From Malacoraja senta (taxonomy: Eukaryota): a stretch of 64,000 nucleotides of DNA. The stretch lies in contig CM075985.1 in assembly GCA_038087875.1 (NCBI GenBank), forward strand, positions 27,404,001 through 27,468,000, in the 5' to 3' direction. The translations under genes were made by a program, and so were the position numbers. The first letter of the stretch is position 1, and each line of letters begins with the position of its first letter. Shown in pieces: positions 36,790 through 60,832 of this stretch. The notes under the pieces are model-generated. The model was not told the DNA's origin, ran no database searches, and was given only the letters and a program-made list of their open reading frames with translations.

Positions 36790-37131
36790 GCCCATTCTGT
36801 TTGGGTGTATGGTCTCCTTGGTCTAATGAACATACACCAAAACCGTCATCTCCAAATGATTATGAATTGTTGAAACCATATGGCACTAAATTGTGCCCAT
36901 CTTCTTCTGATAAAATTACTAATATTCAGTGCCAATTTGCCGACCATCCTCAATGGCCACTAAGTTTATCGCCAGATCTTGTGACCTGCAATAAAGTCAT
37001 AGGATTGATCTGCAAGTTCTCTGGATATCCTTTAGGCCAATTTTGTAGTGACTACAGAATTAGAGTTTGCTGCGAGCCAACTGAGACTACAACTGTCCCC
37101 ACGATTACAACTACCACCAGTCCCACGATTG
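36790..37131 (+). CDS. CysD (WxxW) exon plus Thr tail, unit 1
   Basis: tacag / gtgagt, 342 nt, phase 1-1; WSPW...DYE...CSDYRIRVCC. Confidence 0.92.
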
Positions 37132-37398
37132 GTGAGTGATACCTTCTCCAGTACTTGTTAACAGTCATTTTAAAGGAAGGACAACAATGTCCAAAGTATG
37201 TCCAGCTTGTGCTGGAATTGAACCAAATACAAATGTTACTGCTGAATGTCGCGATGATTATAAATTTGCAGTGACTTGTGTTGAAGTTATTCCACAACAT
37301 CGTTTAATTTATGCAATATATGCTGATTTTGTTACTATTCTCCCAAATGTGCCTTTCTTGAAGTTGGATATAAAGAACATGTATGCATTTGTTTACAG

Positions 37399-37458
37399 AA
37401 GAAACAACAACAACAACAGCCACGACCACCACAGAATCTACCACCAGTCCGACAACTG
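37399..37458 (+). CDS. PTS micro-exon A1, unit 1
   Basis: tacag / gtaagt, 60 nt. Confidence 0.85.
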
Positions 37459-37590
37459 GTAAGTGATAACTTCTCTCAATGTACACTCATGTTTTTTTGT
37501 TATCACAGCTGAGCTCATACACTCATGTTCCCATCCTTGCTTCAAGTTTCGCAATTTCATGATCCCATTTTAGAGTCTGTGGGTTCAGTC

Positions 37591-38340
37591 CACTATCCAC
37601 TCTACTAGTTACATCCTCGAAAAATTCTATAAGATTCGTCAGACATGATTTACCTTTCGTAAATCCATGCTGACTTTGTCCAATGATTTCACCACTTTTC
37701 AAATGTGCTGCTATCCCATCTTTAATAACTGACTCTAACAGTTTCCCCACTACCGATGTTAGACTAACTGGTCTGTAATTCCCCGTTTTCTCTCTCCCTC
37801 CCTTTTTAAAAAGTGGATTTACATTAGCTACTCTCCAATCCTCAGGAACTACTCCAGAATCTAAAGAGTTTTGAAAAATTATCACTAATGCATCCACTAT
37901 TTCTGGAGCTACTTCCTTAAGTACTCTGGGATGCAGCCTATCTGGCCCTGGGGATTTATCGGCCTTTAATCCATTCAATTTACCTAACACCACTTGGCGG
38001 CTCACCTGGATTTCACTCAGTTCCTCCATCTCCTTTGACCCGCGGTCCCCTGCTATTTCCGGCAGATTATTTATGTCTTCCTTAGTGAAGACGGAACCAA
38101 AGTACTTATTCAATTGGTCCGCCATGTCCTTGTTCCCCATGATCAATTCACCTGTTTCTGACTGCAAGGGACCTACATTTGTTTTAACTAATCTCTTTCT
38201 CTTCACATATCTATAAAAACTTTTGCAGTCAGTTTTAATGTTCCCTGCCAGTTTTCTTTTATAATCTTTTTTCCCTTTCCTAATTAAGCCCTTTGTCCTC
38301 CTCTGCTGGTCTCTGAATTTCTCCCATTCCTCTGGTCGAC
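37591..38340 (-). mobile_element. Internal CR1 ORF2 fragment (copies at ~44636-45385 and ~51666-52415)
   Basis: Stop-free KSPGPD...GNYRPVSLTS...QHGF...SCLTNL; lacks both ends of the element. Confidence 0.93.
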
Positions 38341-38498
38341 TGCTGAATGTCGCGATGATTATAAATTTGCAGTGACTTGTGTTGAAGTTATTCCAAAACA
38401 TCTTTAATTTATGCAATATATGCTGATTTTGTAACTACACTCCCAAATGTGCCTTTCTTCAAGTTGAATATTAAGGACATGTATGCATTTGTTTACAG

Positions 38499-38567
38499 AA
38501 GAAACAACAACAACAACAACAACAACACCCACGACCACCACAGAATCTACCACCAGTCTGACAACTG
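38499..38567 (+). CDS. PTS micro-exon A2, unit 1
   Basis: tacag / gtaagt, 69 nt. Confidence 0.82.
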
Positions 38568-39148
38568 GTAAGTGATAACTTCTCTCAATGTACACTCATG
38601 TTTTTTTTTTATCACAGCTGAGCTCATACACTCATGTTCCCATCCTTGCTTCAAGTTCCGCAATTTCATGATTCCATTTTAGAGTCTGTGGGTTCAGTCT
38701 TGATGGTCCTCTGATGCAGGATAGAGATAGTGCAGCACTGACAATACTGTGCTATTCTGCTTGAGACTTTGAGCTGGGTTTGTGAGTGTGCTGTCGTGAC
38801 TGCGGTTTATCTTGTGGCCAATAGCAAAGAACAGAAAAATCTCTCCACTACCATGAATAATAACGATAATTACAACAACATTTCTCAGGAAATATTTTCA
38901 AGCTCTATAGTTTATACGATGAAGATATGAATAAGTAGTTTATGATGTTCCCTACATTTCAGCTGTGACCATATTTTAGTACAATTTCTTGCTGTAAGTC
39001 CTTTGCAAGATAGGAAGTAATTAAAGCAGTTTATCTCCACTTTACACAATCTCTTTTGAAATAGTCCAATTACCTGCATTTGTTGGTCATTCAAAATCTA
39101 CGATTCAACATGGATGATTTAATTGTCCATGAATTTGTTTCTCTTTAG

Positions 39149-39202
39149 AAGAAACATCTACAACAACTAGCACAACTGAGTCCACAACCACTTTCACAAC
39201 TG
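39149..39202 (+). CDS. PTS micro-exon B, unit 1
   Basis: tttag / gtgggt, 54 nt. Confidence 0.8.
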
Positions 39203-39293
39203 GTGGGTGGTGATATTTTCATTTGCAAATCTTTTTAACACAAGCTCCCCTATACATATACATATATCACATAATTCAAAACAAATGTAATGC

Positions 39294-39506
39294 TTTGGCA
39301 GACAAAAATGCTGGAGAAACTCAGCGGGTGCAGCAGCATCTATGGAGCGAAGGAAATAGGCAATGTTTCGTGCCGAAACGGGTCTGAAGAAGGGTTCGGC
39401 CTGAAACATTGCCTATTTCCTTCGCTCCATAGATGCTGCTGCACCCACTGAGTTTCTCCAGCATTTTTGTATATCTTCGATTTTCCAGCATCTACAGTTT
39501 CTTCTT
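39294..39506. mobile_element. Penelope-type hairpin element with 15-bp TSD (copies at ~46339-46551 and ~53372-53584)
   Basis: ~70-bp inverted arms; aaacaaatgtaatgc at 39279-39293 and 39507-39521; empty site in units 4 and 5. Confidence 0.8.
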
Positions 39507-39537
39507 AAACAAATGTAATGCCTTTATTATTTTCCAG

Positions 39538-39588
39538 AAGAAACAACTCCCACGGTGACACCAAGCACCACCATCACCTACACAACAG
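39538..39588 (+). CDS. PTS micro-exon C, unit 1
   Basis: tccag / gtgagt, 51 nt. Confidence 0.83.
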
Positions 39589-39709
39589 GTGAGTGATCAC
39601 CTCTGTCAGTAGGTTATTACCAGCCGTTACGTTCAGTCATTCAATTTCAACTTCCGCTTGCCCTCAGTTGAATCATTCTTCAAGTTGCATGTGATGCTTT
39701 CATTTGCAG

Positions 39710-39769
39710 AAAAAACAACAACAACAACAGAGCCAACCACAAACGAGTCTACCACCAGCCCCACAACTG
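39710..39769 (+). CDS. PTS micro-exon D, unit 1 (contains N-E-S sequon)
   Basis: tgcag / gtgagt, 60 nt. Confidence 0.83.
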
Positions 39770-40171
39770 GTGAGTAATGCCTTTTATCAATCATTTTAAC
39801 ACAAATATGGTCAAATACATTACCACTCGCAGGTTGTGACAATGTTGATCACTCTTGCCTTGTGCAACACAATTTTACCTCAGCAGCTCATGTGATGTTA
39901 TCGAATTTCAAAGTCTTGAGATTCAAACAAGAATGGTGCTTTAATGCAATGCAAAGGAATGACAGTAATGCCCAAAGTATGTGCTGTAGTTGAAACACGT
40001 ACAAATATTACTGCTGAATATAGTATGGATTGTATATTTGCAGTGATTATGTTGAAATATTATTCCACAACTTCTTTTAATTTGTGCAATATATGTTCAT
40101 TTTGTTACTCCTCTCTCAAATGTGTAATTCTTCAAGTTGAATGTAAAGGCCGTGTATGTATGTGTTTACAG

Positions 40172-40228
40172 AAAAAACTACAACAACAGCGACAACAACA
40201 ACAGAATCTACCACCAGTCCCACAACTG
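40172..40228 (+). CDS. PTS micro-exon E, unit 1
   Basis: tacag / gtgagt, 57 nt. Confidence 0.83.
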
Positions 40229-41535
40229 GTGAGTGATAACTACTCTCAATGTAAACCCATGGGTTTTTATATCACAGCTAAGCTCATAAACATCATTTTC
40301 AGTTGCACTCCTTTCCCCTCCTTTCTTCAATTTCACTTCATCCATAACAGGTGAGTGATCGCCTCTGTCAGTATGTACTTACTGGCTGTTGGGTTTGGTT
40401 GTTCAATTAAAACTTCCACTCATCTTCAGTAAAAGTCTAATAATTTGACCTATCCACTACAATTTCCAATAACAAGCATTGGTCTAAATATTGAATGAAG
40501 GGTCCTGAAATTTATTTCTGCAGACAATTATTAGAATCCTCTTCTTTAAGTGATGGCTACCATGATGATCAGCCAGCTTGAGTGAGATGGAGTAAAGCAT
40601 CTCTCATGGGTAATTAACCTCGGTAATTCATAATAAAAGTGCAATGGTAGGCTTTTTAGTGATTGCCATAAATAAGTGGGTACACCATACTGAAATGCAT
40701 TGAGGTCTTGCGAGGGAATGAAAACTGAGAATAAATCGTGCAGGACTATACTATTTTGTTGCTGCTGCATCTCCACTCGTGATGGTTCTGCAGAGAAGAA
40801 AATAATTTTTCCATGTCTAAATTGTTTTCACATTTCTCAATAATTTCTCAGCATTACACTTGAAAGTTCCAAGTGATCAACAGTATGTTAAATGCAGTTA
40901 ACCCTCTTGCTCACAAAATGATGTTCTTTTGAAAGTAGAGTTTACTTGTGATGCAGATAAATCACCCAGCAAATTTTATTGAGGTCTTGCGAGGGAATGA
41001 AAACTGAGAATAAATCGTATGGTTATAATTTTGAAGCCATTTGCTGAAATTATTTTACACAATCATTTATCGGGTTAATTTTCTACTGCCTCAGTTGTGC
41101 CATTCATCAAGTTGAATGGTCATGAATGCTTTTACTTACTTGAGAAATAATAACAGAGTCAACTATAACTGCGTTTACCACCAGTCACATAACTGGTGGG
41201 TGATGCCTGCATTCAATATTAATTCATGGATATTTTAACGCAACTATCCTTTTAAGCACTGTAAGCTTGAACTTTATTGGCTTGCCACAATCGTTTCAGT
41301 TTCAGCGCAGTAGAGTTCTATCCTTCTCCAGAACCTTAAGGGTTCACTCGAGGTTGGTGATATGATACAGAACAGATCAAAGATATCTCCTTCGTTAACC
41401 TTCGGAATTATTTCTGTATCGAGCACCAAAGATACCTTTTCAGATCATTTACCTCTAACACATTTTTTTAAATTGAAATTATTTAAGGTTTTAATTTGCA
41501 AGAGAAAGTTTTGATGAGACTTCATAACCAGAGGT

Positions 41536-42250
41536 TTTCAAGTTCAAGTTTACATTTATTGTCACATGCACCAATTGGTACAGTGAAATTTGGGTTGCCA
41601 TACAGCCATATGAATAAAAAAGGAACACAACACATGATAGAATTTAACATAGACATCCCCACACAGCAGAATCAACATTTCCCACTGTGAGGGAAGGCAA
41701 TAAAGTTGAGCCATCTTCCTCTTTGTTCACCCGTGGTTGGGGCCCCCGATGTTCAGGCCCTACCGGAGACCGCGGCTCCCGAAGTCCACAGGCCGTGCTG
41801 GGCGGAGATTCCCACTGGCGCCCTCGGCAAAGGGACCACCAGGCCTCCGCGATGTTGTTCAGCACCGCCCACGGCTAGAAGCTCTGCAACCACAGATCTA
41901 CGATGTTAAAACAGCAGGTCCAACACTCCAGAGCTTCAACAAACGATCCCCAGTAAGGCACAGCCCGCTCCGCGGTGTTAATTCAGTGCTGCGTCGCTGT
42001 TGCAGCTCTGGTCGGCCGCCGGCAGGAAAGGCCACGCCAATCCAGTTGGTAGGCCGCGAGGAGGGGGCAAAGATGCGACTCGGAGAATAGTCGCGTCCTC
42101 GACAGGAAGAGACTGAGAAACGGTTTCCCCCTTTACCCTGCCCCCTTCTCCCACATAATAAGACTAAGAAAACCTCCAAAACATACTTTTAAACAGACAA
42201 AAAATAACAAAAAGATGAAAAAAAACACACAGACTTCAAATTGCGCCCCA
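41536..42250 (-). mobile_element. GC-rich non-autonomous retroelement (copies at ~48581-49295, ~55426-56140 and from ~63856; related 3' fragment at 25690-25870 on +)
   Basis: Minus strand ends gtgacaataaa...(cttgaa)n; absent from the ~33470 and ~58870 paralogous sites. Confidence 0.65.
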
Positions 42251-42302
42251 TTAATTCTCATAATTAATATATACTACAGTAAATATGTTTGTTATTTTCC
42301 AG

Positions 42303-42347
42303 AAGAAACATCAACTGTGACATCAACCAGCATTCCTTCCACAACAG
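42303..42347 (+). CDS. PTS micro-exon H, unit 1
   Basis: tccag / gtaact, 45 nt. Confidence 0.78.
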
Positions 42348-42427
42348 GTAACTGTTGGCTTTTTCAATATATATTTAATTTGCAACCTCAACTGATCACA
42401 ATGAAAATCCATTTGTTTTCTTCTCTA

Positions 42428-42695
42428 TCATCATCATCATCGTTGAAAACATCAACGTGCACGATGCCTTACAATGCTATGTACGACAGTGATCGCAACT
42501 TCTACGTGTGGATGGCCATTGGCTCGCTAGGAGCTCATCTGCCCTTTGACAGGTCTTGTTTTTGGTCCTGCAGGGGGTTCACTGCCCACTCCTCACCTGG
42601 CAAATCAGGTGGGGGAGACGGTTTAGTCGCCGACTATCCGACCATGGAGCAGGTAGCACGGGATTTCATGGTACCCGTGGCGGGGGGTAATCCCC
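42428..42695 (-). mobile_element. Putative SINE-like element with (GAT)n tail, one per unit
   Basis: GC-richer block preceded by (tca)n; family not identified. Confidence 0.4.
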
Positions 42696-43834
42696 CCTAT
42701 CTTCTCTGCCATTTTGATATATTAGACCCTGTTCCCTGTTCCCTGTTCCCCATTTTTACTTTCATAAGTAAAATGTTCGGTCGCTCACAATGGCAGCTAC
42801 TTTTAACATCATGCAGGAATTTGAACTCACTTCTTTATAAGAATATGATAGGTAACTTCTTTATTTGGGCATGCGAGGAGGCTGTTTGGCCCATTGGGTC
42901 CTTTTCAACTTCCAACAGTACAATGTCATGTCCCCTGCTTATTTCCCTGTAACTCTACAACATATTCTCTCCCACATCCACTCTCCTTTGATTCTTTTGG
43001 TATTGGTCTATACAAAGGGATAATTTACAATAGCCAATTAATCTACCAGTATGTCTCTGGGTGACAGGAGGAACCCAAGGAAGTACAGGGAGCCAATATA
43101 AGCTCCATAAAAACAGCACCTTATATCAGGATTGAACTTGGATCTCTCAAGCTTTCAGGCAAAGGCGAGGCACAGCCTTCCACAGCTTATTGAGAGTGGT
43201 CTTCTTTTCATTATAATCTCTTTCCTGCTTTAACTCTTGGTTCTGTTTTATGAATTGACAGCAAACGTGTTCCTTTATCATATATTATCCTGGAGCAGCT
43301 ACCATTTTGCCATTTCCCTCTTGCCCACCAATTAATCTCTTTCTGCATATATGGTATATATTTTCGCCATATACAGTAGGTAGCATGTTTAAAGGTAATA
43401 TGGTGAGGCAGCGCAACTACTCCAATAATGTTCTTCAATAGCATGCTGAGGCCAACCCATCAAAGTGGAAAGAATATCTGGCTGTTAAAATCATGCAATT
43501 GTTAGTGCACAGCTGCAGTCAGCTGCCTGATAAGTGACATCTCACGTTTGTGCTTTATGCTTTTTCCCCATTGTTCTGTTCTGCACTGGCAATGACTGTT
43601 TCCCTATCTGATACTTGAGGTTGTATCTCAATTCAGATCAATCAACAGTTCCCCAAACATATTGTTATTATTCCCATTTTACTGTTCCCATTTTCATTTA
43701 AACTGTAATTTGGAAGATTCATTTTGATGCACAACCATGTTTCTCAAATCTTGTTTTTTATATTTATGTTTAGTTTTTCCACTTTGTATTGTTTTATACA
43801 AGTTTGCCTTATGTTTTCTTTCTTTACATTACAG

Positions 43835-44176
43835 GCCCATTCTGTTTGGGTGTATGGTCTCCTTGGTCTAATGAACATACACCAAAACCGTCATCTCCAA
43901 ATGATTATGAATTGTTGAAACCATATGGCACTAAATTGTGCCCATCTTCTTCTGATAAAATTACTAATATTCAGTGCCAATTTGCCGACCATCCTCAATG
44001 GCCACTAAGTTTATCGCCAGATCTTGTGACCTGCAATAAAGTCATAGGATTGATCTGCAAGTTCACTGGATATCCTTTAGGCCAATTTTGTAGTGACTAC
44101 AGAATTAGAGTTTGCTGCGAGCCAACTGAGACTACAACTGTCCCCACGATTACAACTACCACCAGTCCCACGATTG
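43835..44176 (+). CDS. CysD exon, unit 2
   Basis: Copy of 36790-37131 at +7045, with one S to T change. Confidence 0.92.
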
Positions 44177-44443
44177 GTGAGTGATACCTTCTCCAGTACT
44201 TGTTAACAGTCATTTTAAAGGAAGGACAACAATGTCTAAAGTATGTCCAGCTTGTGCTGGAATTGAACCAAATACAAATGTTACTGCTGAATGTCGCGAT
44301 GATTATAAATTTGCAGTGACTTGTGTTGAAGTTATTCCACAACATCGTTTAATTTATGCAATATATGCTGATTTTGTTACTATTCTCCCAAATGTGCCTT
44401 TCTTGAAGTTGGATATAAAGAACATGTATGCATTTGTTTACAG

Positions 44444-44503
44444 AAGAAACAACAACAACAACAGCCACGACCACCACAGAATCTACCACCAGTCCGACAA
44501 CTG
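44444..44503 (+). CDS. PTS micro-exon A1, unit 2
   Basis: AG/GT, 60 nt. Confidence 0.85.
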
Positions 44504-45543
44504 GTAAGTGATAACTTCTCTCAATGTACACTCATGTTTTTTTGTTATCACAGCTGAGCTCATACACTCATGTTCCCATCCTTGCTTCAAGTTTCGCAAT
44601 TTCATGATCCCATTTTAGAGTCTGTGGGTTCAGTCCACTATCCACTCTACTAGTTACATCCTCGAAAAATTCTATAAGATTCGTCAGACATGATTTACCT
44701 TTCGTAAATCCATGCTGACTTTGTCCAATGATTTCACCACTTTTCAAATGTGCTGCTATCCCATCTTTAATAACTGACTCTAACAGTTTCCCCACTACCG
44801 ATGTTAGACTAACTGGTCTGTAATTCCCCGTTTTCTCTCTCCCTCCCTTTTTAAAAAGTGGAGTTACATTAGCTACTCTCCAATCCTCAGGAACTACTCC
44901 AGAATCTAAAGAGTTTTGAAAAATTATCACTAATGCATCCACTATTTCTGGAGCTACTTCCTTAAGTACTCTGGGATGCAGCCTATCTGGCCCTGGGGAT
45001 TTATCGGCCTTTAATCCATTCAATTTACCTAACACCACTTGGCGGCTCACCTGGATTTCACTCAGTTCCTCCATCTCCTTTGACCCGCGGTCCCCTGCTA
45101 TTTCCGGCAGATTATTTATGTCTTCCTTAGTGAAGACGGAACCAAAGTACTTATTCAATTGGTCCGCCATGTCCTTGTTCCCCATGATCAATTCACCTGT
45201 TTCTGACTGCAAGGGACCTACATTTGTTTTAACTAATCTCTTTCTCTTCACATATCTACAAAAACTTTTGCAGTCAGTTTTAATGTTCCCTGCCAGTTTT
45301 CTTTTATAATCTTTTTTCCCTTTCCTAATTAAGCCCTTTGTCCTCCTCTGCTGGTCTCTGAATTTCTCCCATTCCTCTGGTCGACTGCTGAATGTCGCGA
45401 TGATTATAAATTTGCAGTGACTTGTGTTGAAGTTATTCCACAACATCTTTAATTTATGCAATATATGCTGATTTTGTAACTACACTCCCAAATGTGCCTT
45501 TCTTCAAGTTGAATATTAAGGACATGTATGCATTTGTTTACAG

Positions 45544-45612
45544 AAGAAACAACAACAACAACAACAACAACACCCACGACCACCACAGAATCTACCACCA
45601 GTCCGACAACTG
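45544..45612 (+). CDS. PTS micro-exon A2, unit 2
   Basis: AG/GT, 69 nt. Confidence 0.82.
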
Positions 45613-46193
45613 GTAAGTGATAACTTCTCTCAATGTACACTCATGTTTTTTTTTTATCACAGCTGAGCTCATACACTCATGTTCCCATCCTTGCTTCAAG
45701 TTCCGCAATTTCATGATTCCATTTTAGAGTCTGTGGGTTCAGTCTTGATGGTCCTCTGATGCAGGATAGAGATAGTGCAGCACTGACAATACTGTGCTAT
45801 TCTGCTTGAGACTTTGAGCTGGGTTTGTGAGTGTGCTGTCGTGACTGCGGTTTATCTTGTGGCCAATAGCAAAGAACAGAAAAATCTCTCCACTACCATG
45901 AATAATAACGATAATTACAACAACATTTCTCAGGAAATATTTTCAAGCTCTATAGTTTATACGATGAAGATATGAATAAGTAGTTTATGATGTTCCCTAC
46001 ATTTCAGCTGTGACCATATTTTAGTACAATTTCTTGCTGTAAGTCCTTTGCAAGATAGGAAGTAATTAAAGCAGTTTATCTCCACTTTACACAATCTCTT
46101 TTGAAATAGTCCAATTACCTGCATTTGTTGGTCATTCAAAATCTACGATTCAACATGGATGATTTAATTGTCCATGAATTTGTTTCTCTTTAG

Positions 46194-46582: not shown

Positions 46583-46633
46583 AAGAAACAACTCCCACGG
46601 TGACACCAAGCACCACCATCACCTACACAACAG
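46583..46633 (+). CDS. PTS micro-exon C, unit 2
   Basis: AG/GT, 51 nt. Confidence 0.83.
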
Positions 46634-51206: not shown

Positions 51207-51473
51207 GTGAGTGATACCTTCTCCAGTACTTGTTAACAGTCATTTTAAAGGAAGGACAACAATGTCCAAAGTATGTCCAGCTTGTGCTGGAATTGAACCA
51301 AATACAAATGTTACTGCTGAATGTCGCGATGATTATAAATTTGCAGTGACTTGTGTTGAAGTTATTCCACAACATCGTTTAATTTATGCAATATATGCTG
51401 ATTTTGTTACTATTCTCCCAAATGTGCCTTTCTTGAAGTTGGATATAAAGAATATGTATGCATTTGTTTACAG

Positions 51474-51533
51474 AAGAAACAACAACAACAACAGCCACGA
51501 CCACCACAGAATCTACCACCAGTCCGACAACTG
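51474..51533 (+). CDS. PTS micro-exon A1, unit 3
   Basis: AG/GT, 60 nt. Confidence 0.85.
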
Positions 51534-52573
51534 GTAAGTGATAACTTCTCTCAATGTACACTCATGTTTTTTTGTTATCACAGCTGAGCTCATACACTCA
51601 TGTTCCCATCCTTGCTTCAAGTTTCGCAATTTCATGATCCCATTTTAGAGTCTGTGGGTTCAGTCCACTATCCACTCTACTAGTTACATCCTCGAAAAAT
51701 TCTATAAGATTCGTCAGACATGATTTACCTTTCGTAAATCCATGCTGACTTTGTCCAATGATTTCACCACTTTTCAAATGTGCTGCTATCCCATCTTTAA
51801 TAACTGACTCTAACAGTTTCCCCACTACCGATGTTAGACTAACTGGTCTGTAATTCCCCGTTTTCTCTCTCCCTCCCTTTTTAAAAAGTGGATTTACATT
51901 AGCTACTCTCCAATCCTCAGGAACTACTCCAGAATCTAAAGAGTTTTGAAAAATTATCACTAATGCATCCACTATTTCTGGAGCTACTTCCTTAAGTACT
52001 CTGGGATGCAGCCTATCTGGCCCTGGGGATTTATCGGCCTTTAATCCATTCAATTTACCTAACACCACTTGGCGGCTCACCTGGATTTCACTCAGTTCCT
52101 CCATCTCCTTTGACCCGCGGTCCCCTGCTATTTCCGGCAGATTATTTATGTCTTCCTTAGTGAAGACGGAACCAAAGTACTTATTCAATTGGTCCGCCAT
52201 GTCCTTGTTCCCCATGATCAATTCACCTGTTTCTGACTGCAAGGGACCTACATTTGTTTTAACTAATCTCTTTCTCTTCACATATCTATAAAAACTTTTG
52301 CAGTCAGTTTTAATGTTCCCTGCCAGTTTTCTTTTATAATCTTTTTTCCCTTTCCTAATTAAGCCCTTTGTCCTCCTCTGCTGGTCTCTGAATTTCTCCC
52401 ATTCCTCTGGTCGACTGCTGAATGTCGCGATGATTATAAATTTGCAGTGACTTGTGTTGAAGTTATTCCACAACATCTTTAATTTATGCAATATATGCTG
52501 ATTTTGTAACTACACTCCCAAATGTGCCTTTCTTCAAGTTGAATATTAAGGACATGTATGCATTTGTTTACAG

Positions 52574-52645
52574 AAGAAACAACAACAACAACAACAACAA
52601 CAACACCCACGACCACCACAGAATCTACCACCAGTCCGACAACTG
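52574..52645 (+). CDS. PTS micro-exon A2, unit 3 (one extra ACA codon)
   Basis: AG/GT, 72 nt. Confidence 0.82.
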
Positions 52646-53226
52646 GTAAGTGATAACTTCTCTCAATGTACACTCATGTTTTTTTTTTATCACAGCTGAG
52701 CTCATACACTCATGTTCCCATCCTTGCTTCAAGTTCCGCAATTTCATGATTCCATTTTAGAGTCTGTGGGTTCAGTCTTGATGGTCCTCTGATGCAGGAT
52801 AGAGATAGTGCAGCACTGACAATACTGTGCTATTCTGCTTGAGACTTTGAGCTGGGTTTGTGAGTGTGCTGTCGTGACTGCGGTTTATCTTGTGGCCAAT
52901 AGCAAAGAACAGAAAAATCTCTCCACTACCATGAATAATAACGATAATTACAACAACATTTCTCAGGAAATATTTTCAAGCTCTATAGTTTATACGATGA
53001 AGATATGAATAAGTAGTTTATGATGTTCCCTACATTTCAGCTGTGACCATATTTTAGTACAATTTCTTGCTGTAAGTCCTTTGCAAGATAGGAAGTAATT
53101 AAAGCAGTTTATCTCCACTTTACACAATCTCTTTTGAAATAGTCCAATTACCTGCATTTGTTGGTCATTCAAAATCTACGATTCAACATGGATGATTTAA
53201 TTGTCCATGAATTTGTTTCTCTTTAG

Positions 53227-53280
53227 AAGAAACATCTACAACAACTAGCACAACTGAGTCCACAACCACTTTCACAACTG
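53227..53280 (+). CDS. PTS micro-exon B, unit 3
   Basis: AG/GT, 54 nt. Confidence 0.8.
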
Positions 53281-53615
53281 GTGGGTGGTGATATTTTCAT
53301 TTGCAAATCTTTTTAACACAAGCTCCCCTATACATATACATATATCACATAATTCAAAACAAATGTAATGCTTTGGCAGACAAAAATGCTGGAGAAACTC
53401 AGCGGGTGCAGCAGCATCTATGGAGCGAAGGAAATAGGCAATGTTTCGTGCCGAAACGGGTCTGAAGAAGGGTTCGGCCTGAAACATTGCCTATTTCCTT
53501 CGCTCCATAGATGCTGCTGCACCCCCTGAGTTTCTCCAGCATTTTTGTATATCTTCGATTTTCCAGCATCTACAGTTTCTTCTTAAACAAATGTAATGCC
53601 TTTATTATTTTCCAG

Positions 53616-53666
53616 AAGAAACAACTCCCACAGTGACACCAAGCACCACCATCACCTACACAACAG
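53616..53666 (+). CDS. PTS micro-exon C, unit 3
   Basis: AG/GT, 51 nt. Confidence 0.83.
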
Positions 53667-53787
53667 GTGAGTGATCACCTCTGTCAGTAGGTTATTACCA
53701 GCCGTTACGTTCAGTCATTCAATTTCAACTTCCGCTTGCCCTCAGTTGAATCATTCTTCAAGTTGCATGTGATGCTTTCATTTGCAG

Positions 53788-53847
53788 AAAAAACAACAAC
53801 AACAACAGAGCCAACCACAAACAAGGCTACCACCCGCCCCACAACTG
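53788..53847 (+). CDS. PTS micro-exon D, unit 3, weakened donor (possibly skipped)
   Basis: 60 nt; donor is GTGTAA instead of GTGAGT. Confidence 0.45.
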
Positions 53848-54061
53848 GTGTAATGTCTTTTATCAATCATTTTAACACAAATATGCTCAAATACAGTATA
53901 TATTTGAATATAGTATGGATTGTATATTTGCAGTGATTATGTTGAAATATTATTCCACAACTTCTTTTAATTTGTGCAATATATGTTCATTTTGTTACTC
54001 CTCTCTCAAATGTGTAATTCTTCAAGTTGAATGTAAAGGCCGTGTATGTATGTGTTTACAG

Positions 54062-54118
54062 AAAAAACTACAACAACAGCGACAACAACAACAGAATCTA
54101 CCACCAGTCCCACAACTG
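54062..54118 (+). CDS. PTS micro-exon E, unit 3
   Basis: AG/GT, 57 nt. Confidence 0.83.
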
Positions 54119-56192
54119 GTGAGTGATAACTACTCTCAATGTAAACCCAGGGGTTTTTATATCACAGCTAAGCTCATAAACATCATTTTCAGTTGCACTC
54201 CTTTCCCCTCCTTTCTTCAATTTCACTTCCTCCATAACAGGTGAGTGATCGCCTCTGTCAGTATGTACTTACTGGCTGTTGGGTTTGGTTGTTCAATTAA
54301 AACTTCCACTCATCTTCAGTAAAAGTCTAATAATTTGACCTTTCCACTACTATTTCCAATAACAAGCATTGGTTTAAATATTGAATGAAGGGTCCTGAAA
54401 TTTATTTCTGCAGACAATTATTAGAATCCTCTTCTTTAAATGATGGCTACCATGATGATCAGCCAGCTTGAGTGAGATGGAGTAAAGCATCTCTCATGGG
54501 TAATTAACCTAGGTAATTCATAATAAAAGTGCAATGGTAGGCTTTTTAGTGATTGCCATAAATAAGTGGGTACACCATACTGAAATGCATTGAGGTCTTG
54601 CGAGGGAATGAAAACTGAGAATAAATCGTGCAGGACTATACTATTTTGTTGCTGCTGCATCTCCACTCGTGATGGTTCTGCAGAGAAGAAAATAATTTTT
54701 CCATGTCTAAATTGTTTTCACATTTCTCAATAATTTCTCAGCATTACACTTGAAAGTTCCAAGTGATCAACAGTATGTTAAATGCAGTTAACCCTCTTGC
54801 TCACAAAATGATGTTCTTTTGAAAGTAGAGTTTACTTGTGATGCAGATAAATCACCCAGCAAATTTTATTGAGGTCTTGCGAGGGAATGAAAACTGAGAA
54901 TAAATCGTATGGTTATAATTTTGAAGCCATTTGCTGAAATTATTTTACACAATCATTTATCGGGTTAATTTTCTACTGCCTCAGTTGTGCCATTCATCAA
55001 GTTGAATGGTCATGAATGCTTTTATTTACTTGAGAAATAATAACAGAGTCAACTATAACTGCGTTTACCACCAGTCACATAACTGGTGGGTGATGCCTTC
55101 ATTCAATATTAATTCATGGATATTTTAACGCAACTATCCTTTTAAGCACTGTAAGCTTGAACTTTATTGGCTTGCCACAATCGTTTCAATTTCAGCGCAG
55201 TAGAGTTCTATCCTTCTCCAGAACCTTAAGGGTTCACTCGAGGTTGGTGATATGATACAGAACAGATCAAAGATATCTCCTTCGTTAACATTCGGAATTA
55301 TTTCTGTATCGAGCACCAAAGATACCTTTTCAGATCATTTACCTTTAACAAATTTTTTTTAATTGAAATTATTTAAGGTTTTAATTTGCAAGAGAAAGTT
55401 TTGATGAGACTTCATAACCAGAGGTTTTAAAGTTCAAGTTTACATTTATTGTCACATGCGCCAATTGGTACAGTGAAATTTGGGTTGCCATACAGCCATA
55501 TGAATAAAAAAGGAACACAACACACGATAGAATTTAACATAGACATCCCCACACAGCAGAATCAACATTTCCCACTGTGAGGGAAGGCAATAAAGTTGAG
55601 CCATCTTCCTCTTTGTTCACCCGTGGTTGGGGCCCCCGATGTTCAGGCCCTACCGGAGACCGCGGCTCCCGAAGTCCACAGGCCGTGCTGGGCGGAGATT
55701 CCCACTGGCGCCCTCGGCAAAGGGACCACCAGGCCTCCGCGATGTTGTTCAGCACCGCCCACGGCTAGAAGCTCCGCAACCACAAATCTACGATGTTAAA
55801 ACAGCAGGTCCAACACTCCAGAGCTTCAACAAACGATCCCCAGTAAGGCACAGCCCGCTCCGCGGTGTTAATTCAGTGCTGCGTCGCTGTTGCAGCTCTG
55901 GTCGGCTGCCGGCAGGAAAGGCCATGCCAATCCAGTTGGTAGGCCGCGAGGAGGGGGCAAAGATGCGACTCGGAGAATAGTCGCATCCTCAACAGGAAGA
56001 GACTGAGAAACGGTTTCCCCCTTTACCCTGCTCCCTTCTCCCACATAATAAGACGAAGAAAACCTCCAAAACATACTTTTAAACAGACAAAAAATAACAT
56101 AAAGATGAAAAAAAACATACAGACTTCAAATTGCGCCCCATTAATTCTCATAATTAATATATACTACAGTAAATATGTTTGTTATTTTCCAG

Positions 56193-56237
56193 AAGAAACA
56201 TCAACTGTGACATCAACCAGCATTTCTTCCACAACAG
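56193..56237 (+). CDS. PTS micro-exon H, unit 3
   Basis: AG/GT, 45 nt. Confidence 0.78.
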
Positions 56238-57720
56238 GTAACTGTTGGCTTTTTCAAAATATATTTAATTTGCAACCTCAACTGATCACAATGAAAATCC
56301 ATTTGTTTTCTTCTCTATCATCATCATCATCATCGTTGAAAACATCAACGTGCACGATGCCTTACAATGCTATGTACGACAGTGATCGCAACTTCTACGT
56401 GTGGATGGCCGTTGGCTCGCTAGGAGCTCATCTGCCCTTTGACAGGTCTTGTTTTTGGTCCTGCAGAGGGTTCACTGCCCACTCCTCACCTGGCAAATCA
56501 GGTGGGGGAGACGGTTTAGTCGCCGACTATCCGTCCATGGAGCAGGTAGCATGGGATTTCATGGTACCCGTGGCGGGGGGGGTAAACCCCCCTATCTTCT
56601 CTGCCATTTTGATATATTAGACCCTGTTCCCTGTTCCCTGTTCCCCATTTTTACTTTCATAAGTAAAATGTTCGGTCGCTCACAATGGCAGCTACTTTTA
56701 ACATCATGTGGGAATTTGAACTCACTTCTTTATAAGAATATGATAGGTAACTTCTTTATTTGGGCATGCGAGGAGGCTGTTTGGCCCATTGGGTCCTTTT
56801 CAACTTCCAACAGTACAATGTCATGTCCCCTGCTTATTTCCCTGTAACTCTACAACATATTCTCTCCCACATCTACTCTCCTTTGATTCTTTTGGTATTG
56901 GTCTATACAAAGGGATAATTTACAATAGCCAATTAATCTACCAGTATGTCTCTGGGTGACAGGAGGAACCCAAGGAAGTCAATATAAGTTCCATACAAAC
57001 AGCACCTAATATCAGGATTGAACTTGGATCTCTCAAGCGTTCAGGCAAAGGCGAGGCACAGCCTTCCACAGCTTATTGAGAGTGGTCTTCTTTTCATTAT
57101 AATCTCTTTCCTGCTTTAACTCTTGGTTCTGTTTAATGAATTGACAGCAAACGTGTTCCTTTATCATATAATATCCTGGAGCAGCTACCTTTTTGCCATT
57201 TCCCTCTTGCCCACCAATTAATCTCTTCTGCATATATGGTATATCTTTTTACCATATATAGTACGTAGCATGTTTAAAGGTGATATGGTGATTCAGAGCA
57301 ACTACTCCAATAATGTTCTTCAATAGCACGCTGAGACCTGCCCATCAAAGTGGAAAGAATATCCAGCTGTTAAAATCATGCAATAGTTAGTGCACAGCTG
57401 CAGTCAGCTGCCTGATAAGTGACATCTCATGTTTGTGCTTTATGCTTTTTCCCCATTGTTCTGTTCTGCGCTGGCAATTGCTGTTTCCCTATCTGATACT
57501 TGAGGTTGTATATTAATTCAGATCAATCAACAGTTCCCCAAACATATTGTTATTATTCCCGTTTTACTGTTCCCATTTTCATTTAAACTGTAATTTGGAA
57601 GATTCATTTTGATGCACAACCATGTTTCTCAAATCTTGTTTTTTATATTTATGTTTAGATTTTCCACTTTGTATTGTTTTATACAAGTTTGCCTTATGTT
57701 TTCTTTCTTTTCCATTACAG

Positions 57721-58068
57721 TGCCAGTCTGTTCAGGTGTATGGTCCCATTGGCAGAATAAACATAAACCATCATCTTCATCTCCGGATGATTATGAATTG
57801 TTGAAAACATATGGCCCTACAATTTGCCCATCTTCTTCCGATGAAATTACTAATATTCAGTGCCAATTTGCCGACCATCCTCAATGGCCACTAAGTGTAT
57901 CGCCAGATCCTGTGATCTGCAATATAGACATAGGATTGATCTGCAAGTTCTCTGGATATCCTTATGGCCACTTTTGTAGTGACTACAGAATTAGAGTTTG
58001 CTGTGAGCCAACTGAGCCTACAACTGTCCCCACGACTACAACTGAGTTTACAACCAGTCCCACAACTG
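57721..58068 (+). CDS. CysD exon, unit 4 (type B, WSHW)
   Basis: tacag / gtgagt, 348 nt. Confidence 0.92.
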
Positions 58069-58320
58069 GTGAGTACTTGTGAATGGTCATTTTAAAGGAA
58101 GGACAACAATGTCCAAAGTATGTCCAGCTTGTGCTGGAATTGAACCACATGCAAATGTTACTGCTGAATGTCGCGATGATTATAAATTTGCAGTGGCTTT
58201 TGTTCAAGTTATTCCACAACTTCTTTTAATTTATGTAATATATGCTGATTTTGTTACTACTCTCTCAAATGTGCCTTTCTTCAAGTTGAATATAAAGGAC
58301 ATGTATGCATTTGTTTACAG

Positions 58321-58383
58321 AAGAAACAACAACAACAACAACAGCCACGACCACAACAGAATCTATCACCAGTCCTACAACTG
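58321..58383 (+). CDS. PTS micro-exon A, unit 4
   Basis: AG/GT, 63 nt. Confidence 0.84.
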
Positions 58384-58661
58384 GTAAGTGATAACCTCTC
58401 TCAATGTACACTCATGTGGGTTTTTTTTTATCACAGCTGAGCTCATACACTCATGTTCCCATCCTTGCTTCAAGTTTTGCAATTTCATGATCCCATTTCA
58501 GAGTCTATGTGTTCAGTCTCGATGGTCCTCTGATACAGGATAGTGATAGTGCAGCACTGACAAATACTGTGCTATTCTGCAAATCTTTTTACAAAAGCTC
58601 CCCATTACACATACATATTATTTTTATTCAAAACAAATGTAATGCCTTTATTATTTTCCAG

Positions 58662-58702
58662 AAGAAACAACTCCCACGTTGCCAACAAGCACCACCATAT
58701 GA
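58662..58702 (+). pseudogene. Broken type C exon: acceptor intact, 3' end deleted, runs into TGA
   Basis: EETTPTLPTSTTI-stop fused to downstream intron sequence. Confidence 0.7.
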
Positions 58703-59571
58703 CACAGAACAGATCAAAGATATCTCCTTCGTTAACATTCAGAATTATTTCTGTGTCAAGCACCAAAGATATCTTTTCAGATCATTTACCTTTGTTAACA
58801 AATTTAAAAAATTGAAATTATTTAAGGTTATAAGTTGCAAGAGAAGGTTTTGATGAGATTTCATAACCAGAAGTTTTGTAAATGTTATCATACAACTGAA
58901 ATCTGAGACACCATATTGGAGAGAGTTTAAAGACCAAATGTAATATACAAAACCAGCTGATTATCTGAAACAGTTAAATTTACTCTTAGGTCCTAAAGCC
59001 ATAGGCGTAGTTGGAAGATGAGGCACTGTCACTTACACTGAGTACTAAACTTTATTGGAACTGTGTTGGAGATACAAAGTGGAAATGTAGGGAACATTTA
59101 AATGACAGACACTTTAATTCTCATAATTAATATATACTACAGTAAATCTGTTTTGGTCTCCACTCTGCTGTGGACCTTCCCTTCCCTTTTCTTGTATACT
59201 CACTGCCTTTCCTGATTATTGTTTAGATTTTATTTGTTGCTTTGCAGTAACACTTTTTCCAGACATACCCCTTGTTCTTTCTTCTCCTTTGCTTCCATCT
59301 TTCAGTCACCATTTGGGTCACTCAATCTCTCCTGATCTCCAGCCCGTCACATCATCCCCTATTTTTCTGCACCGTAAATATTTTTTAATTCTAAATTTTC
59401 CAGTACTTATAAAATAGAATCAGTCTCAAATGTTAATTCTTAACAGATGCTGCTTGACCTACCAAGTACTTCCAGTCATTTCTGCTTTCATTTTTCTTGT
59501 GTCTGAAATCTGCTTGAGTGGTATAAGAATTGAGTTGACTTTGTGATTTGAATTTGTTTGTTATTTTCCAG

Positions 59572-59616
59572 AAGAAACATCAACTGTGACATCAACCAGC
59601 ATTCCTTCCACAACAG
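59572..59616 (+). CDS. PTS micro-exon H, unit 4
   Basis: tccag / gtaagt, 45 nt. Confidence 0.82.
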
Positions 59617-60484
59617 GTAAGTGTTGGCTTTTTCAATACATATTTATTTTGCAACCTCAACTGATCACAATGAAAATCCATTTGTTTTCTTCTCTATCTT
59701 CATCATCATCATCGTTGAAAACATCAATGTGCACGGTGCCTTACAATGCTATGTACGACAGTGATCGTAACTTCTCCTGAAGTGTGGATGGCCGTTGGCT
59801 CGCTAGGAGCTCTTCCGCCCTTTGACAGGTCTTGTTTTTGGTCCTGCAGGGGTTCACAGCCCCCTCCTCACCTGGCAAATCAGGTGGGGGAGACGGTTTA
59901 GTCTCCGACTGTCCGACCATGGAGCAGGTAGCACGGGATTACATGGTACCCGTGGCGGGGGGAACTCCCCCCGATTTTCTCTACCTTTTTTGTATATTAG
60001 ACCCTGTTCCCTGTTCCCCATTTTGATTTTGATAAGTAAAATCTTTACACAATCTCTTTTGAAATAGTCCAATTACCGTCTGCATTTGTTGGTCATTCAA
60101 AATCTACGATTCAACATGGATGATTTAATTGTCCATGAATCATGCAATAGTTAGTGCACAGCTGCAGTCAGCTGCCTGATAAGTGACATCTCATGTTTGT
60201 GCTTTATGCTTTTTCCCCATTGTTCTGTTCTGCACTGGCAATTGCTGTTTCCCTATCTGATACTTGAGGTTGTATCTTAATTCAGATCAATCAACAGTTC
60301 CCCAAACATATTGTTATTATTCCCATTTTACTGTTCCCATTTTCATTTAAACTGTAATTTGGAAGATTCATTTTGATGCACAACCATGTTTCTAAAATCT
60401 TGTTTTTTACAGTTATGTTTATATTTTCCACTTTGTATTGTTTTATACAAGTTTGCCTTATGTTTTCTTTCTTTTCCATTACAG

Positions 60485-60832
60485 TGCCAGTCTGTTCAGG
60501 TGTATGGTCTCATTGGCATAATAAACATAAACCATCATCTTCATCTCCAGATGATTATGAATTGTTGAAAACATATGGCCCTACAATTTGCCCATCTTCT
60601 ACCGATGAAATTACTAATATTCAGTGCCAATTTGCCGACCATCCTCAATGGCCACTAAGTGTATCGCCAGATCTTGTGATCTGCAATAAAGACATAGGAT
60701 TGATCTGCGAGTTCTCTGGATATCCTTTTGGCCACTTTTGTAGTGACTACAGAATTAGAGTTTGCTGTGAGCCAACTGAGACTACAACTGTCCCCACGAC
60801 TACAACTGAGTCTACAACCAGTCCCACAACTG
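60485..60832 (+). CDS. CysD exon, unit 5 (type B)
   Basis: tacag / gtgagt, 348 nt. Confidence 0.92.

What the first reader, a model, noticed from the sequence alone, without database searches (positions are those of the whole stretch)
36790..60832. CysD copies diverge almost only by amino-acid changes
Hand alignment of the ~97-codon CysD part: unit 1 vs unit 5 differs at 22 amino acids with 1 purely synonymous codon; unit 1 vs unit 4 differs at 22 amino acids with 4 synonymous codons. All 8 Cys and the WxxW motif are kept, and the adjacent upstream intron looks clearly more similar than the exon. Inference: diversifying selection on CysD surfaces (self-association specificity or microbe/protease contact), or gene conversion homogenising introns but not exons.
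Basis: partly seen in the sequence, partly recalled or inferred. Interest (0 to 1): 0.7.

Follow-up and report, generated by a model that had tools for sequence, protein, structure and literature searches.

The report
Fast-evolving CysD loops in skate mucin
Five copies of a small disulfide-locked "CysD" domain in a skate mucus-protein gene change their amino acids two to three times faster than neighbouring non-coding DNA while keeping their cysteine scaffold.

Summary
All 8 Cys and WxxW are kept.

The counts do not show dN/dS above 1. About 79% of sites are nonsynonymous, so pairwise dN/dS is 1.05 and 1.64 (p 0.48, 0.26) and the ML average is 1.47 (p 0.21). The two comparisons are really one: units 1-3 are near-identical and units 4-5 are sisters.

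The exon-versus-intron contrast is real and is the stronger signal.
- **Within the window:** upstream intron 3.3% diverged, exon 5' third about 20%, exon 3' part about 5%.
- **Against the orthologous Rhinoraja longicauda locus:** 20,370 intron columns differ by 8.4% and D-domain dS is 0.089. The CysD exon differs by 19% (dN 0.235, dS 0.15).
- **Site models:** they favour about 46% of codons at omega about 3.5 (p 0.009; 0 of 40 bootstraps; p 0.018 allowing multi-nucleotide hits).
- **Location:** variable sites lie mostly in loops and recur at the same positions.

Best reading (about 0.6): recurrent positive selection on CysD loops, on top of concerted evolution of a 7-kb tandem array. Intron homogenisation alone cannot explain the between-species result. 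Other notes of this scan describe this skate's mucin genes, but none that I saw addresses selection.

The parts
36790..37131 (+). CysD exon, unit 1 (A type). The CysD core of 96 codons is 36792-37079. A Thr-rich tail runs to the GTGAGT donor.
   Evidence: PF13330, E 2e-13. PDB MUC5B CysD 8oer, E 5.6e-10.
43835..44176 (+). CysD exon, unit 2 (A type). It differs from unit 1 by one nonsynonymous change (Ser to Thr at codon 77).
50865..51206 (+). CysD exon, unit 3 (A type). The core is identical to unit 1.
57721..58068 (+). CysD exon, unit 4 (B type).
60485..60832 (+). CysD exon, unit 5 (B type). It differs from unit 4 by 6 amino acids and 2 synonymous codons.
36790..36912 (+). Hot cluster of A/B differences, 19-20% diverged. 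It encodes the N-terminal stretch, the WxxW strand, the loop between invariant N12 and D23, and the loop before Cys35.
36444..36789 (+). Upstream intron segment shared by all five units and by Rhinoraja. It is 3.2-3.5% diverged between A and B types and 6.3-7.5% between species. I used it as the linked neutral reference.
35410..56347 (+). Three tandem 7,045-bp units (starting at 35410, 42455 and 49500), 99.2-99.6% identical. Each carries one A-type CysD exon and several PTS micro-exons.
53905..58523 (+). Hybrid unit that carries unit 4. About 3.3 kb on its left is roughly 99% identical to A-type units. From about 350-400 bp upstream of the CysD exon onward it is B type, so a crossover or conversion junction lies near 57300-57400.
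4148..30004 (+). D1-D3 (VWD/C8/TIL) exons of the same gene. I used them as the coding control: 971 codons against Rhinoraja give dN 0.053, dS 0.089, omega 0.59.

Best explanation
What it is. The five exons encode CysD domains of a skate gel-forming mucin with a MUC19-like head. They sit in a tandem array together with Thr-rich micro-exons.

Two processes act on the array.

(1) Concerted evolution. Unequal crossing-over or gene conversion keeps whole units nearly identical (units 1-3). It also creates hybrid units such as unit 4.

(2) Fast amino-acid replacement. In about half of the CysD codons, mostly in surface loops, replacements have been fixed faster than the neutral rate. This happened on at least three lineages: A type, B type and the Rhinoraja array. 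The scaffold stays fixed: 8 Cys, the two Trp, and the invariant N12, D23, E25, D87 and Y88, which I take to be the Ca-site residues. The variable sites include the Cys74-Cys85 loop, which corresponds to the docking loop of human MUC2 CysD1.

What I infer. The most likely cause is recurrent positive (diversifying) selection on exposed CysD loops. These are the only protein surfaces in the mucin core that are not covered by glycans.

Shown here: the rates, the affected sites, and the conservation of the fold.
Inferred, not shown: the selective agent. It could be microbial adhesins or proteases, or co-evolving partners of the mucin itself.
For: Orthologue. The Rhinoraja longicauda locus L001 is collinear with the window.

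Neutral references.
- 20,370 aligned intron columns are 8.43% diverged.
- D-domain exons give dS 0.089 over 971 codons.

CysD exon rates between species.
- The exon is 19.0% diverged. That exceeds all 67 intron windows of 290 bp (maximum 12.6%).
- It is the only stretch of its repeat unit with three consecutive 100-bp windows at 16-21%.
- Unit 1 vs R2: 35 of 96 residues differ, dN 0.235, dS 0.151.
- Nd/N vs introns p 2.5e-8; Sd/S vs introns p 0.15; Nd:Sd contrast with the D domains p 0.016.

Models.
- Joint MG94+HKY model sharing branch lengths with the adjacent intron: a neutral exon is rejected (LRT 35, p 3e-9). Omega above 1 holds even with a free exon rate (p 0.048).
- Site models: M2a vs M1a LRT 9.52, p 0.0086, with 46% of sites at omega 3.5.
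- 0 of 40 parametric bootstraps reach that LRT.
- With multi-nucleotide changes allowed, LRT 8.04, p 0.018.

Pattern of change.
- Multi-hit codons are 13.5%, against 2.3% of intron triplets (p 6e-7).
- 13 sites show three different residues in A, B and Rhinoraja.
- Sites that vary within the gene coincide with sites that vary between species (16 observed, 8.4 expected, p 2e-4).
- 32 of 42 variable sites lie in predicted loops (p 0.012).
- ts:tv is 0.46 in the exon against 1.25 in introns (p 7e-4).

Against borrowed sequence. No paralogue resembles the derived sequences. The best match is 53% for the Rhinoraja type and 63% for the A type.

Within the window. Nd/N exceeds flank divergence (p 3e-4 and 2.7e-3).

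Not a general property of CysD. Other elasmobranch pairs show a CysD/D-region divergence ratio of only 0.85-1.9, against 3.3 here.
Against: - Average omega is not significantly above 1: pairwise 1.05-1.85, ML 1.47 with p 0.21.
- Synonymous divergence in the exon is also raised. It is 0.15-0.25 against 0.089, and significant for unit 4 vs Rhinoraja (p 0.0035). The joint model fits 'exon 3x faster, omega = 1' about as well as 'omega = 3' (lnL -1457.8 vs -1457.5). Its best fit splits the effect: rho 1.9, omega 1.8.
- Only three effective lineages and 96 codons are available.
- The likelihood code is my own, not codeml or HyPhy.
- Paralogous repeats that undergo conversion violate the single-tree assumption.
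- If multi-hit codons are set aside, single-hit nonsynonymous divergence (22 of 226 sites) is close to the neutral rate.
- Acceleration is uneven. It is strongest in Rhinoraja and the B type, and the A type is fairly conservative.
Confidence: 0.6

Rival explanations
1. Mosaic history or an exon-targeted mutational process. Short patches of the CysD exon are overwritten by micro gene conversion from diverged CysD copies elsewhere (further along the array, in neighbouring mucin genes, or in pseudogenes). Alternatively the exon is a local mutation hot spot. Either way, synonymous and nonsynonymous sites both jump while the introns keep the true, younger divergence.
For: - Exon synonymous divergence is raised (rho 1.9 in the joint model, p 0.066; unit 4 vs Rhinoraja Sd/S p 0.0035).
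- Changes are clustered: 13 multi-hit codons, and a 123-bp hot patch between the A and B types.
- Conversion and crossover tracts demonstrably exist in the array.
- According to other notes of this scan, the genome holds a cluster of mucin genes with CysD exons.
Against: - The derived sequences are less, not more, similar to every known CysD (47-53% for the Rhinoraja type). No donor was found among 356 collected proteins, which include the Rhinoraja neighbour P0152.
- A dS of 0.15 is far below what an old paralogue would give.
- The boundary of the fast zone coincides with the splice acceptor in two independent comparisons.
- The substitution spectrum differs from the neutral one (ts:tv 0.46 vs 1.25).
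- Omega above 1 survives a free exon rate (p 0.048) and a multi-hit model (p 0.018).
- The scaffold residues are untouched.
Confidence: 0.2
2. Relaxed constraint plus intron homogenisation. The CysD loops are simply unconstrained (omega about 1), and conversion has erased intron differences between units. The exon then only looks fast.
For: - Pairwise dN/dS is 1.05-1.64 and within-window changes are 28 N: 6 S, indistinguishable from neutrality.
- The upstream intron is a low-divergence patch compared with the downstream intron (3.3% vs 6%).
- The left part of the unit-4 repeat is about 99% identical to A-type units.
Against: - Neutral sequence cannot diverge faster than introns between species. 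The exon is 19% diverged against 8.4% (z about 6, no intron window reaches it), and dN of 0.235 is 2.6x the locus dS.
- Homogenisation within an array does not lower divergence between species.
- About half of the codons are under constraint, so the remainder must run well above neutral.
Confidence: 0.12
3. Artefact. Repeat mis-assembly, or misalignment in the low-complexity loop (compensating 6-bp indels), inflates the apparent substitutions.
For: - Units 1-3 are 99.2-99.6% identical over 7 kb, which is hard to assemble.
- The loop HTPKPSSPND / HKPSSSSPDD can be aligned in another way, with two 6-bp indels (my reading of the sequence).
Against: - All ten exons (five here, five in Rhinoraja) are intact, of equal core length, and have canonical splice sites.
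- The ungapped alignment keeps P16, S19 and P21 in all three types.
- Two independent assemblies show the same architecture.
- The NCBI gene model P0160 includes the Rhinoraja CysDs.
Confidence: 0.05

Closest known systems
CysD domains of human MUC2, MUC5AC and MUC5B (Pfam PF13330; PDB 6tm6, 8s03, 8ov0, 8oer)
   Same: Same domain family. Pfam E is 2e-13 and the profile matches the PDB chains at E 1e-15 to 1e-18. The predicted six-strand beta-sandwich has solved CysD structures as its top eight matches. It has the WxxW motif and lies between PTS stretches. The Cys74-Cys85 loop aligns with the MUC2 CysD1 loop between C1365 and C1379, which docks onto the filament bead (PMC11912381).
   Different: These copies are encoded by separate small exons in a 7-kb tandem array, not by one giant central exon. 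They sit in a gene with a MUC19-like head. Their loops are hypervariable, whereas the comparable MUC5AC CysD1 loop is reported as highly conserved among vertebrate orthologues (PMC11912381). Only 8 Cys lie in the exon, whereas the human domains are described with five disulfides.
Accelerated evolution of exons relative to introns on a fixed disulfide scaffold (snake venom PLA2 and three-finger toxins, conotoxins). Cited from my own knowledge; no paper was read here.
   Same: Exons diverge faster than the flanking introns. dN is at or above dS. Cysteines are conserved and loops are replaced. Multi-hit codons and transversions are in excess.
   Different: This is a structural mucus glycoprotein domain, not a secreted toxin. 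The copies lie inside one gene and are also subject to concerted evolution. The evidence rests on two species.
Concerted evolution of tandem coding repeats (mucin VNTR/PTS arrays)
   Same: Units 1-3 are 99.2-99.6% identical. The Rhinoraja copies R1-R5 are near-identical to each other yet 19% different from the window's copies. Internal CysD copies are identical within several shark genes.
   Different: Homogenisation is incomplete. The A and B types coexist, and the hybrid unit keeps a B-type exon next to 3.3 kb of A-type sequence.
MUC19-family mucins of cartilaginous fishes that carry CysD domains (NCBI models P0160 'mucin-6-like' of Rhinoraja, P0164 of Hemitrygon, P0036 of Hypanus)
   Same: P0160 is the orthologue. 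Its D-domain exons are 85-94% identical in protein and its introns about 91.6% identical in DNA.
   Different: Its CysD domains are only 63.5% (A type) or 59.4% (B type) identical to those of the window.

Membership tests
CysD / Mucin2_WxxW domain (Pfam PF13330) | Significant match to the family profile over its full length | tested here: met
   All three exon types score 51-52 bits against a cut-off of 22.4, E about 2e-13, covering profile positions 1-88 of 88.
CysD / Mucin2_WxxW domain (Pfam PF13330) | WxxW motif and conserved cysteine pattern | tested here: met
   The motif is WSPW or WSHW. Eight Cys lie at invariant or near-invariant columns in 37 chondrichthyan CysDs. The human domains are described with five disulfides (PMC11912381). 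A fifth pair was not found inside this exon.
CysD / Mucin2_WxxW domain (Pfam PF13330) | [quoted passage not shown] | tested here: met
   The AF2 model has pLDDT 75 and six strands. The top eight Foldseek matches are all CysD structures, with TM 0.42-0.56 and probability 0.66-1.0. Model quality is moderate.
CysD / Mucin2_WxxW domain (Pfam PF13330) | Two bound calcium ions | not testable with these tools
   N12, D23, E25 and D87 are invariant, which is consistent with a metal site as described for MUC2 CysD1 (PMC7599080). Binding was not tested.
Gene or domain under positive (diversifying) selection | Average dN/dS significantly above 1 | tested here: not met
   Pairwise 1.05-1.85 with p 0.11-0.48. 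ML M0 omega is 1.47 with p 0.21.
Gene or domain under positive (diversifying) selection | A class of sites with omega above 1 (M2a vs M1a) | tested here: met
   LRT 9.52, p 0.0086, omega2 3.5 in 46% of sites. 0 of 40 bootstraps reach it. With multi-hit changes allowed, LRT 8.04, p 0.018. This used my own code and three effective lineages.
Gene or domain under positive (diversifying) selection | Nonsynonymous rate above an independent neutral rate (introns; dS of other exons) | tested here: met
   dN is 0.235, against intron divergence of 0.084 and D-domain dS of 0.089. p is 2.5e-8 and 4.6e-6. Joint model LRT is 35.
Gene or domain under positive (diversifying) selection | Synonymous rate in the same exon not elevated, so that mutation or history is excluded | tested here: inconclusive
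   Unit 1 vs R2 Sd/S is 13.7% against 8.4% (p 0.15). Unit 4 vs R2 is 21% (p 0.0035). Rho is 1.9 with p 0.066.
Gene or domain under positive (diversifying) selection | Excess of fixed replacements relative to polymorphism (McDonald-Kreitman test) | not testable with these tools
   No population data are available.
Tandem array under concerted evolution | Copies more alike within a species than between species | tested here: met
   Units 1-3 differ by 1% or less. R1-R5 differ by 0-2%. A type vs Rhinoraja differs by 19% in the exon and 6.6% in the intron. The B type is a partial exception.

The most novel reading that the evidence does not exclude
The CysD loops of this skate mucin form a hypervariable recognition or decoy surface in an arms race with microbes, for example with mucus-degrading proteases or adhesins. 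On this reading, selection also opposes homogenisation of the exons, so that one mucin polymer displays several CysD specificities (A and B types) on a constant disulfide scaffold. That would be a germline-encoded 'variable domain' inside a gel-forming mucin.
Probability: 0.2. Interest if true: 0.8.

Novelty: new member of a known kind. Interest (0 to 1): 0.6.

Why it matters
CysD domains are usually treated as conserved cross-linking or organising modules of gel-forming mucins. If their loops evolve adaptively in a fish mucus protein, then the naked protein islands between the glycan brushes are themselves contact surfaces under pressure, from microbes, from proteases, or from co-evolving partners within the mucin. 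Nature would in effect have run a mutational scan of which CysD positions tolerate or favour change.

The case also shows that counting amino-acid versus silent differences by eye misleads. The real signal came from introns and from an orthologue.

The idea is directly testable. One could express the A, B and Rhinoraja CysDs and compare their self-association, calcium binding, protease sensitivity and microbe binding.

Tried and rejected
- **Word-index search with the 113-aa exon product.** It found nothing, as expected from that tool's length window. The exhaustive HMMER search and region searches with P0036 and P0160 gave the relatives instead.
- **More skate orthologues.** None closer than Rhinoraja appeared. 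The Leucoraja and Amblyraja hits are paralogues, 68-75% identical in D3.
- **Independent replicate in stingrays.** The DNA of the Hypanus and Hemitrygon loci could not be fetched because the gene ranges exceed 100 kb. Only a protein-level comparison was possible: CysD 11.6% diverged against D-region 6.2%.
- **Compensating 6-bp indels in the loop at codons 13-22.** I considered these as an explanation for clustered changes and rejected them. The ungapped alignment keeps P16, S19 and P21 in all three types.
- **Conversion from a paralogue.** I looked for a donor among 356 collected proteins and found none.
- **A universal property of CysD.** Rejected, since other elasmobranch pairs show divergence ratios of only 0.85-1.9.
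- **First M1a/M2a run.** It timed out and was redone with eigen-decomposition.
- **Mapping onto 3D coordinates.** Only secondary structure and the alignment to solved CysDs were used.

Full report
**1. What is there**

The window holds the head and the start of the central region of a gel-forming mucin gene on the + strand. D1-D3 exons (VWD/C8/TIL) lie between about 4,100 and 30,000. From about 32,000 onward, short Thr-rich exons of 42-72 nt in phase 1-1 alternate with five CysD exons.

The CysD exons are at 36790-37131, 43835-44176, 50865-51206, 57721-58068 and 60485-60832. Each is bounded by AG and GTGAGT. The finding's start and end are the first base of exon 1 and the last base of exon 5.

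Each exon product matches Pfam PF13330 (Mucin2_WxxW) at E about 2e-13 over the whole profile. By sequence they match the solved CysD domains of MUC5B, MUC5AC and MUC2. An AlphaFold2 model (pLDDT 75) has six strands, and its top eight Foldseek matches are all solved CysD structures.

**2. Array structure**

Units 1-3 belong to a 7,045-bp tandem repeat whose copies are 99.2-99.6% identical. Their CysD cores are identical except for one Ser/Thr change in unit 2.

Units 4 and 5 are a second type (B). They are 97.6% identical to each other and 91-93% identical to type A.

The repeat that carries unit 4 is a hybrid. About 3.3 kb on its left is roughly 99% identical to A-type units. The B-type sequence begins some 350-400 bp upstream of the exon.

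**3. The observation**

The counts are right. There are 21 amino-acid differences in the 96 full codons, plus one in the split first codon. There are 4 (1 vs 4) and 1 (1 vs 5) purely synonymous codons. All 8 Cys and WxxW are retained.

The inference from these counts is not valid.
- There are 227 nonsynonymous and 60 synonymous sites.
- Synonymous steps inside multi-hit codons must be counted too. The differences are then 25.5 N : 6.5 S and 24 N : 4 S.
- This gives dN/dS = 1.05 and 1.64 (one-sided Fisher p 0.48 and 0.26).
- Polarising with the outgroup gives 28 N: 6 S for all changes within the window, against a neutral expectation of about 3.8: 1.

The statement about the intron holds.

| Segment (A vs B) | Divergence |
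|---|---|
| 346 bp upstream intron | 3.2-3.5% |
| First 123 bp of the exon | 19-20% |
| Remaining 167 bp of the core | 4-5% |
| Downstream intron | about 6% |

Nd/N exceeds the pooled flanks (p 3e-4 and 2.7e-3). Sd/S does not (p 0.07 and 0.36).

**4. An orthologue makes the test possible**

An exhaustive HMMER search with the CysD core found chondrichthyan mucins. The D-domain exons of the window are 85-94% identical in protein to P0160, 'mucin-6-like' of the skate Rhinoraja longicauda. Its locus (L001) is collinear with the window, introns included. So the window comes from a skate. The scan's other notes say the same.

Rhinoraja has the same architecture with a 6.6-kb period. Its five CysD copies (R1-R5) are nearly identical to each other.

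Neutral references between the two species:
- 20,370 aligned intron columns differ by 8.43%.
- The 346-bp intron next to the CysD exon differs by 6.3-7.5%.
- The 971 D-domain codons give dS 0.089, dN 0.053, omega 0.59.

Against this background the CysD exon differs by 19.0%.
- That is more than any of 67 intron windows of the same size (maximum 12.6%).
- It is the only segment of its repeat unit with three consecutive 100-bp windows at 16-21%. The PTS micro-exons behave like introns.
- 35 of 96 residues differ. dN is 0.235 and dS 0.151 for unit 1 vs R2.
- Nd/N exceeds the intron rate (p 2.5e-8) and the D-domain dS (p 4.6e-6). Sd/S does not (p 0.15 and 0.17). The N:S contrast with the D domains gives p 0.016.

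Homogenisation of introns within an array cannot reduce divergence between species.

**5. Likelihood models (my own GY94/MG94 code; seven distinct sequences; tree A, B, Rhinoraja)**

- **One ratio:** omega 1.47, not different from 1 (p 0.21).
- **Site classes:** M2a beats M1a (LRT 9.52, p 0.0086), with 54% of sites at omega 0.33 and 46% at omega 3.5.
- **Bootstrap:** none of 40 data sets simulated under M1a reaches this LRT (maximum 5.45).
- **Multi-nucleotide changes:** allowing instantaneous double and triple changes leaves LRT 8.04, p 0.018.
- **Joint model:** here the adjacent intron (HKY) and the exon (MG94) share branch lengths.
  - 'Exon neutral at the intron rate' is rejected (LRT 35, p 3e-9).
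  - 'Omega = 3, same rate' and 'three-fold rate, omega = 1' fit about equally well.
  - With both free, rho is 1.9 and omega 1.8.
  - Omega above 1 has p 0.048, and rho above 1 has p 0.066.

**6. Pattern of the changes**

- Multi-hit codons are 13 of 96. The figure is 2.3% for intron triplets and 1.3% for D-domain codons (p 6e-7).
- Thirteen sites carry three different residues in A, B and Rhinoraja.
- Sites that vary between A and B coincide with sites that vary between species (16 observed, 8.4 expected, p 2e-4).
- 32 of 42 variable sites lie in predicted loops (p 0.012).
- Invariant residues across 37 chondrichthyan CysDs include the Cys, both Trp, N12, D23, E25, D87, Y88 and R91.
- Candidate selected sites (posterior above 0.8) are 2, 4, 9, 11, 15, 17, 18, 20, 22, 28, 29, 33, 34, 41, 54, 55, 59, 63, 65, 75, 76, 81 and 83.
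- Four of these lie in the Cys74-Cys85 loop. By alignment this is the loop between C1365 and C1379 of human MUC2 CysD1, which docks onto the filament bead and differs between MUC2 and MUC5AC (PMC11912381, PMC7599080).
- The substitution spectrum of the exon is rich in transversions (17 ts: 37 tv). Introns show 955: 762 (p 7e-4). This argues against a faster version of the same mutational process.

**7. Where the change happened**

With stingray CysDs as outgroups, the Rhinoraja type has 12-15 unique residues against 3-4 for the A type (p 0.02-0.035). The B type has 7-10 against 3 (not significant).

The derived types are less similar to every other CysD than the A type is. The Rhinoraja type is at most 53% identical, the B type about 59% and the A type 63%. 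No paralogue looks like a donor.

Other elasmobranch species pairs show a ratio of CysD divergence to D-region divergence of only 0.85-1.9, against 3.3 here. The acceleration is therefore episodic and specific to this skate gene, not a general laxity of CysD.

**8. Reading**

The best-supported account combines two processes.
- Concerted evolution of the 7-kb units.
- Repeated fixation of amino-acid changes in exposed CysD loops at a rate above neutral, on a conserved disulfide/Trp/acidic scaffold.

I put this at about 0.6.

The main reservation is that synonymous sites in the exon are also somewhat fast. Patchy conversion from unseen donors, or a local mutational process, may therefore contribute (about 0.2).

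Pure relaxation combined with intron homogenisation is largely excluded by the between-species data (about 0.12). Assembly or alignment artefacts are unlikely (about 0.05).

The selective agent is not shown. Microbial proteases or adhesins, or co-evolving contacts within the mucin, are inferences from what CysD domains do in mammals (PMC7599080, PMC11912381).

**9. Novelty**

The one search I made for CysD, mucin and positive selection returned a single paper. It concerns selection on human MUC5AC haplotypes, not on CysD codons.

Lang et al. treat CysD as a mark of MUC2/MUC5-type mucins (PMC4948705). Here the head is closest to mammalian MUC19 (55-56% identity, against 45-48% for MUC5AC and MUC2). 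Other notes of this scan already describe that architecture.

Exons that evolve faster than introns on a fixed cysteine scaffold are well known from toxins; I cite that from my own knowledge. This is therefore a new instance of a known kind, in a domain where it had not been described in the papers searched.

Noticed in passing
window 35410-56347: Three tandem 7,045-bp units are 99.2-99.6% identical over more than 11 kb. This means very recent duplication or homogenisation, or a stretch that is hard to assemble. Each unit holds one CysD exon and five or six PTS micro-exons.
   Followed up: partly
window 53905-58523: The repeat that carries CysD unit 4 is a hybrid. About 3.3 kb is roughly 99% identical to A-type units. 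Then comes a 200-bp zone of 8% divergence, then B-type sequence. The crossover or conversion junction lies about 350-400 bp upstream of the exon, so the exon kept its B type next to homogenised DNA.
   Followed up: partly
window 20298-27156 (D3 exons): The D3 region of the orthologue P0160 is closest to mammalian MUC19 (55-56% identity) rather than MUC5AC or MUC2 (45-48%). Yet the gene carries CysD domains, which mammalian MUC19 lacks. The NCBI name for the orthologue is 'mucin-6-like'.
   Followed up: partly
window 32339-62570: The PTS region is encoded by many symmetrical phase-1 micro-exons of 42-72 nt rather than by one large exon. Between species they diverge like introns (3-12%), unlike the CysD exon.
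   Followed up: partly
L001 56513-56683, 63033-63203, 69661-69831, 76288-76458, 82915-83085; window 18893-19063 (minus strand): A repeat element of about 170 bp, 92-93% identical to a copy in a D-region intron of the window, sits once in every Rhinoraja repeat unit. It is absent at that place in the window's units. The insertion was spread through the Rhinoraja array after the species split.
   Followed up: no
L001 54880-55637 and equivalent places: Rhinoraja has about 750 bp of extra sequence directly downstream of each CysD exon, compared with the window. The downstream intron therefore could not serve as a between-species neutral control.
   Followed up: no
window 4148-30004 vs L001: The D-domain exons have a rather high omega of 0.59 (971 codons). 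Intron ts:tv is only 1.25 between the two skates.
   Followed up: no
P0001 (Cetorhinus), P0002 (Mustelus), P0151 (Heterodontus), P0153 (Carcharodon): In several shark mucins the internal CysD copies are identical or nearly so within a gene, while the first and last copies differ. This is a textbook edge effect of concerted evolution.
   Followed up: no
window codons 17-18 of each CysD (36840-36845 and equivalents): The loop residues are Lys-Pro in the A type, Ser-Ser in the B type and Thr-Thr in Rhinoraja. The derived types gain potential O-glycosylation sites in the most variable loop.
   Followed up: no
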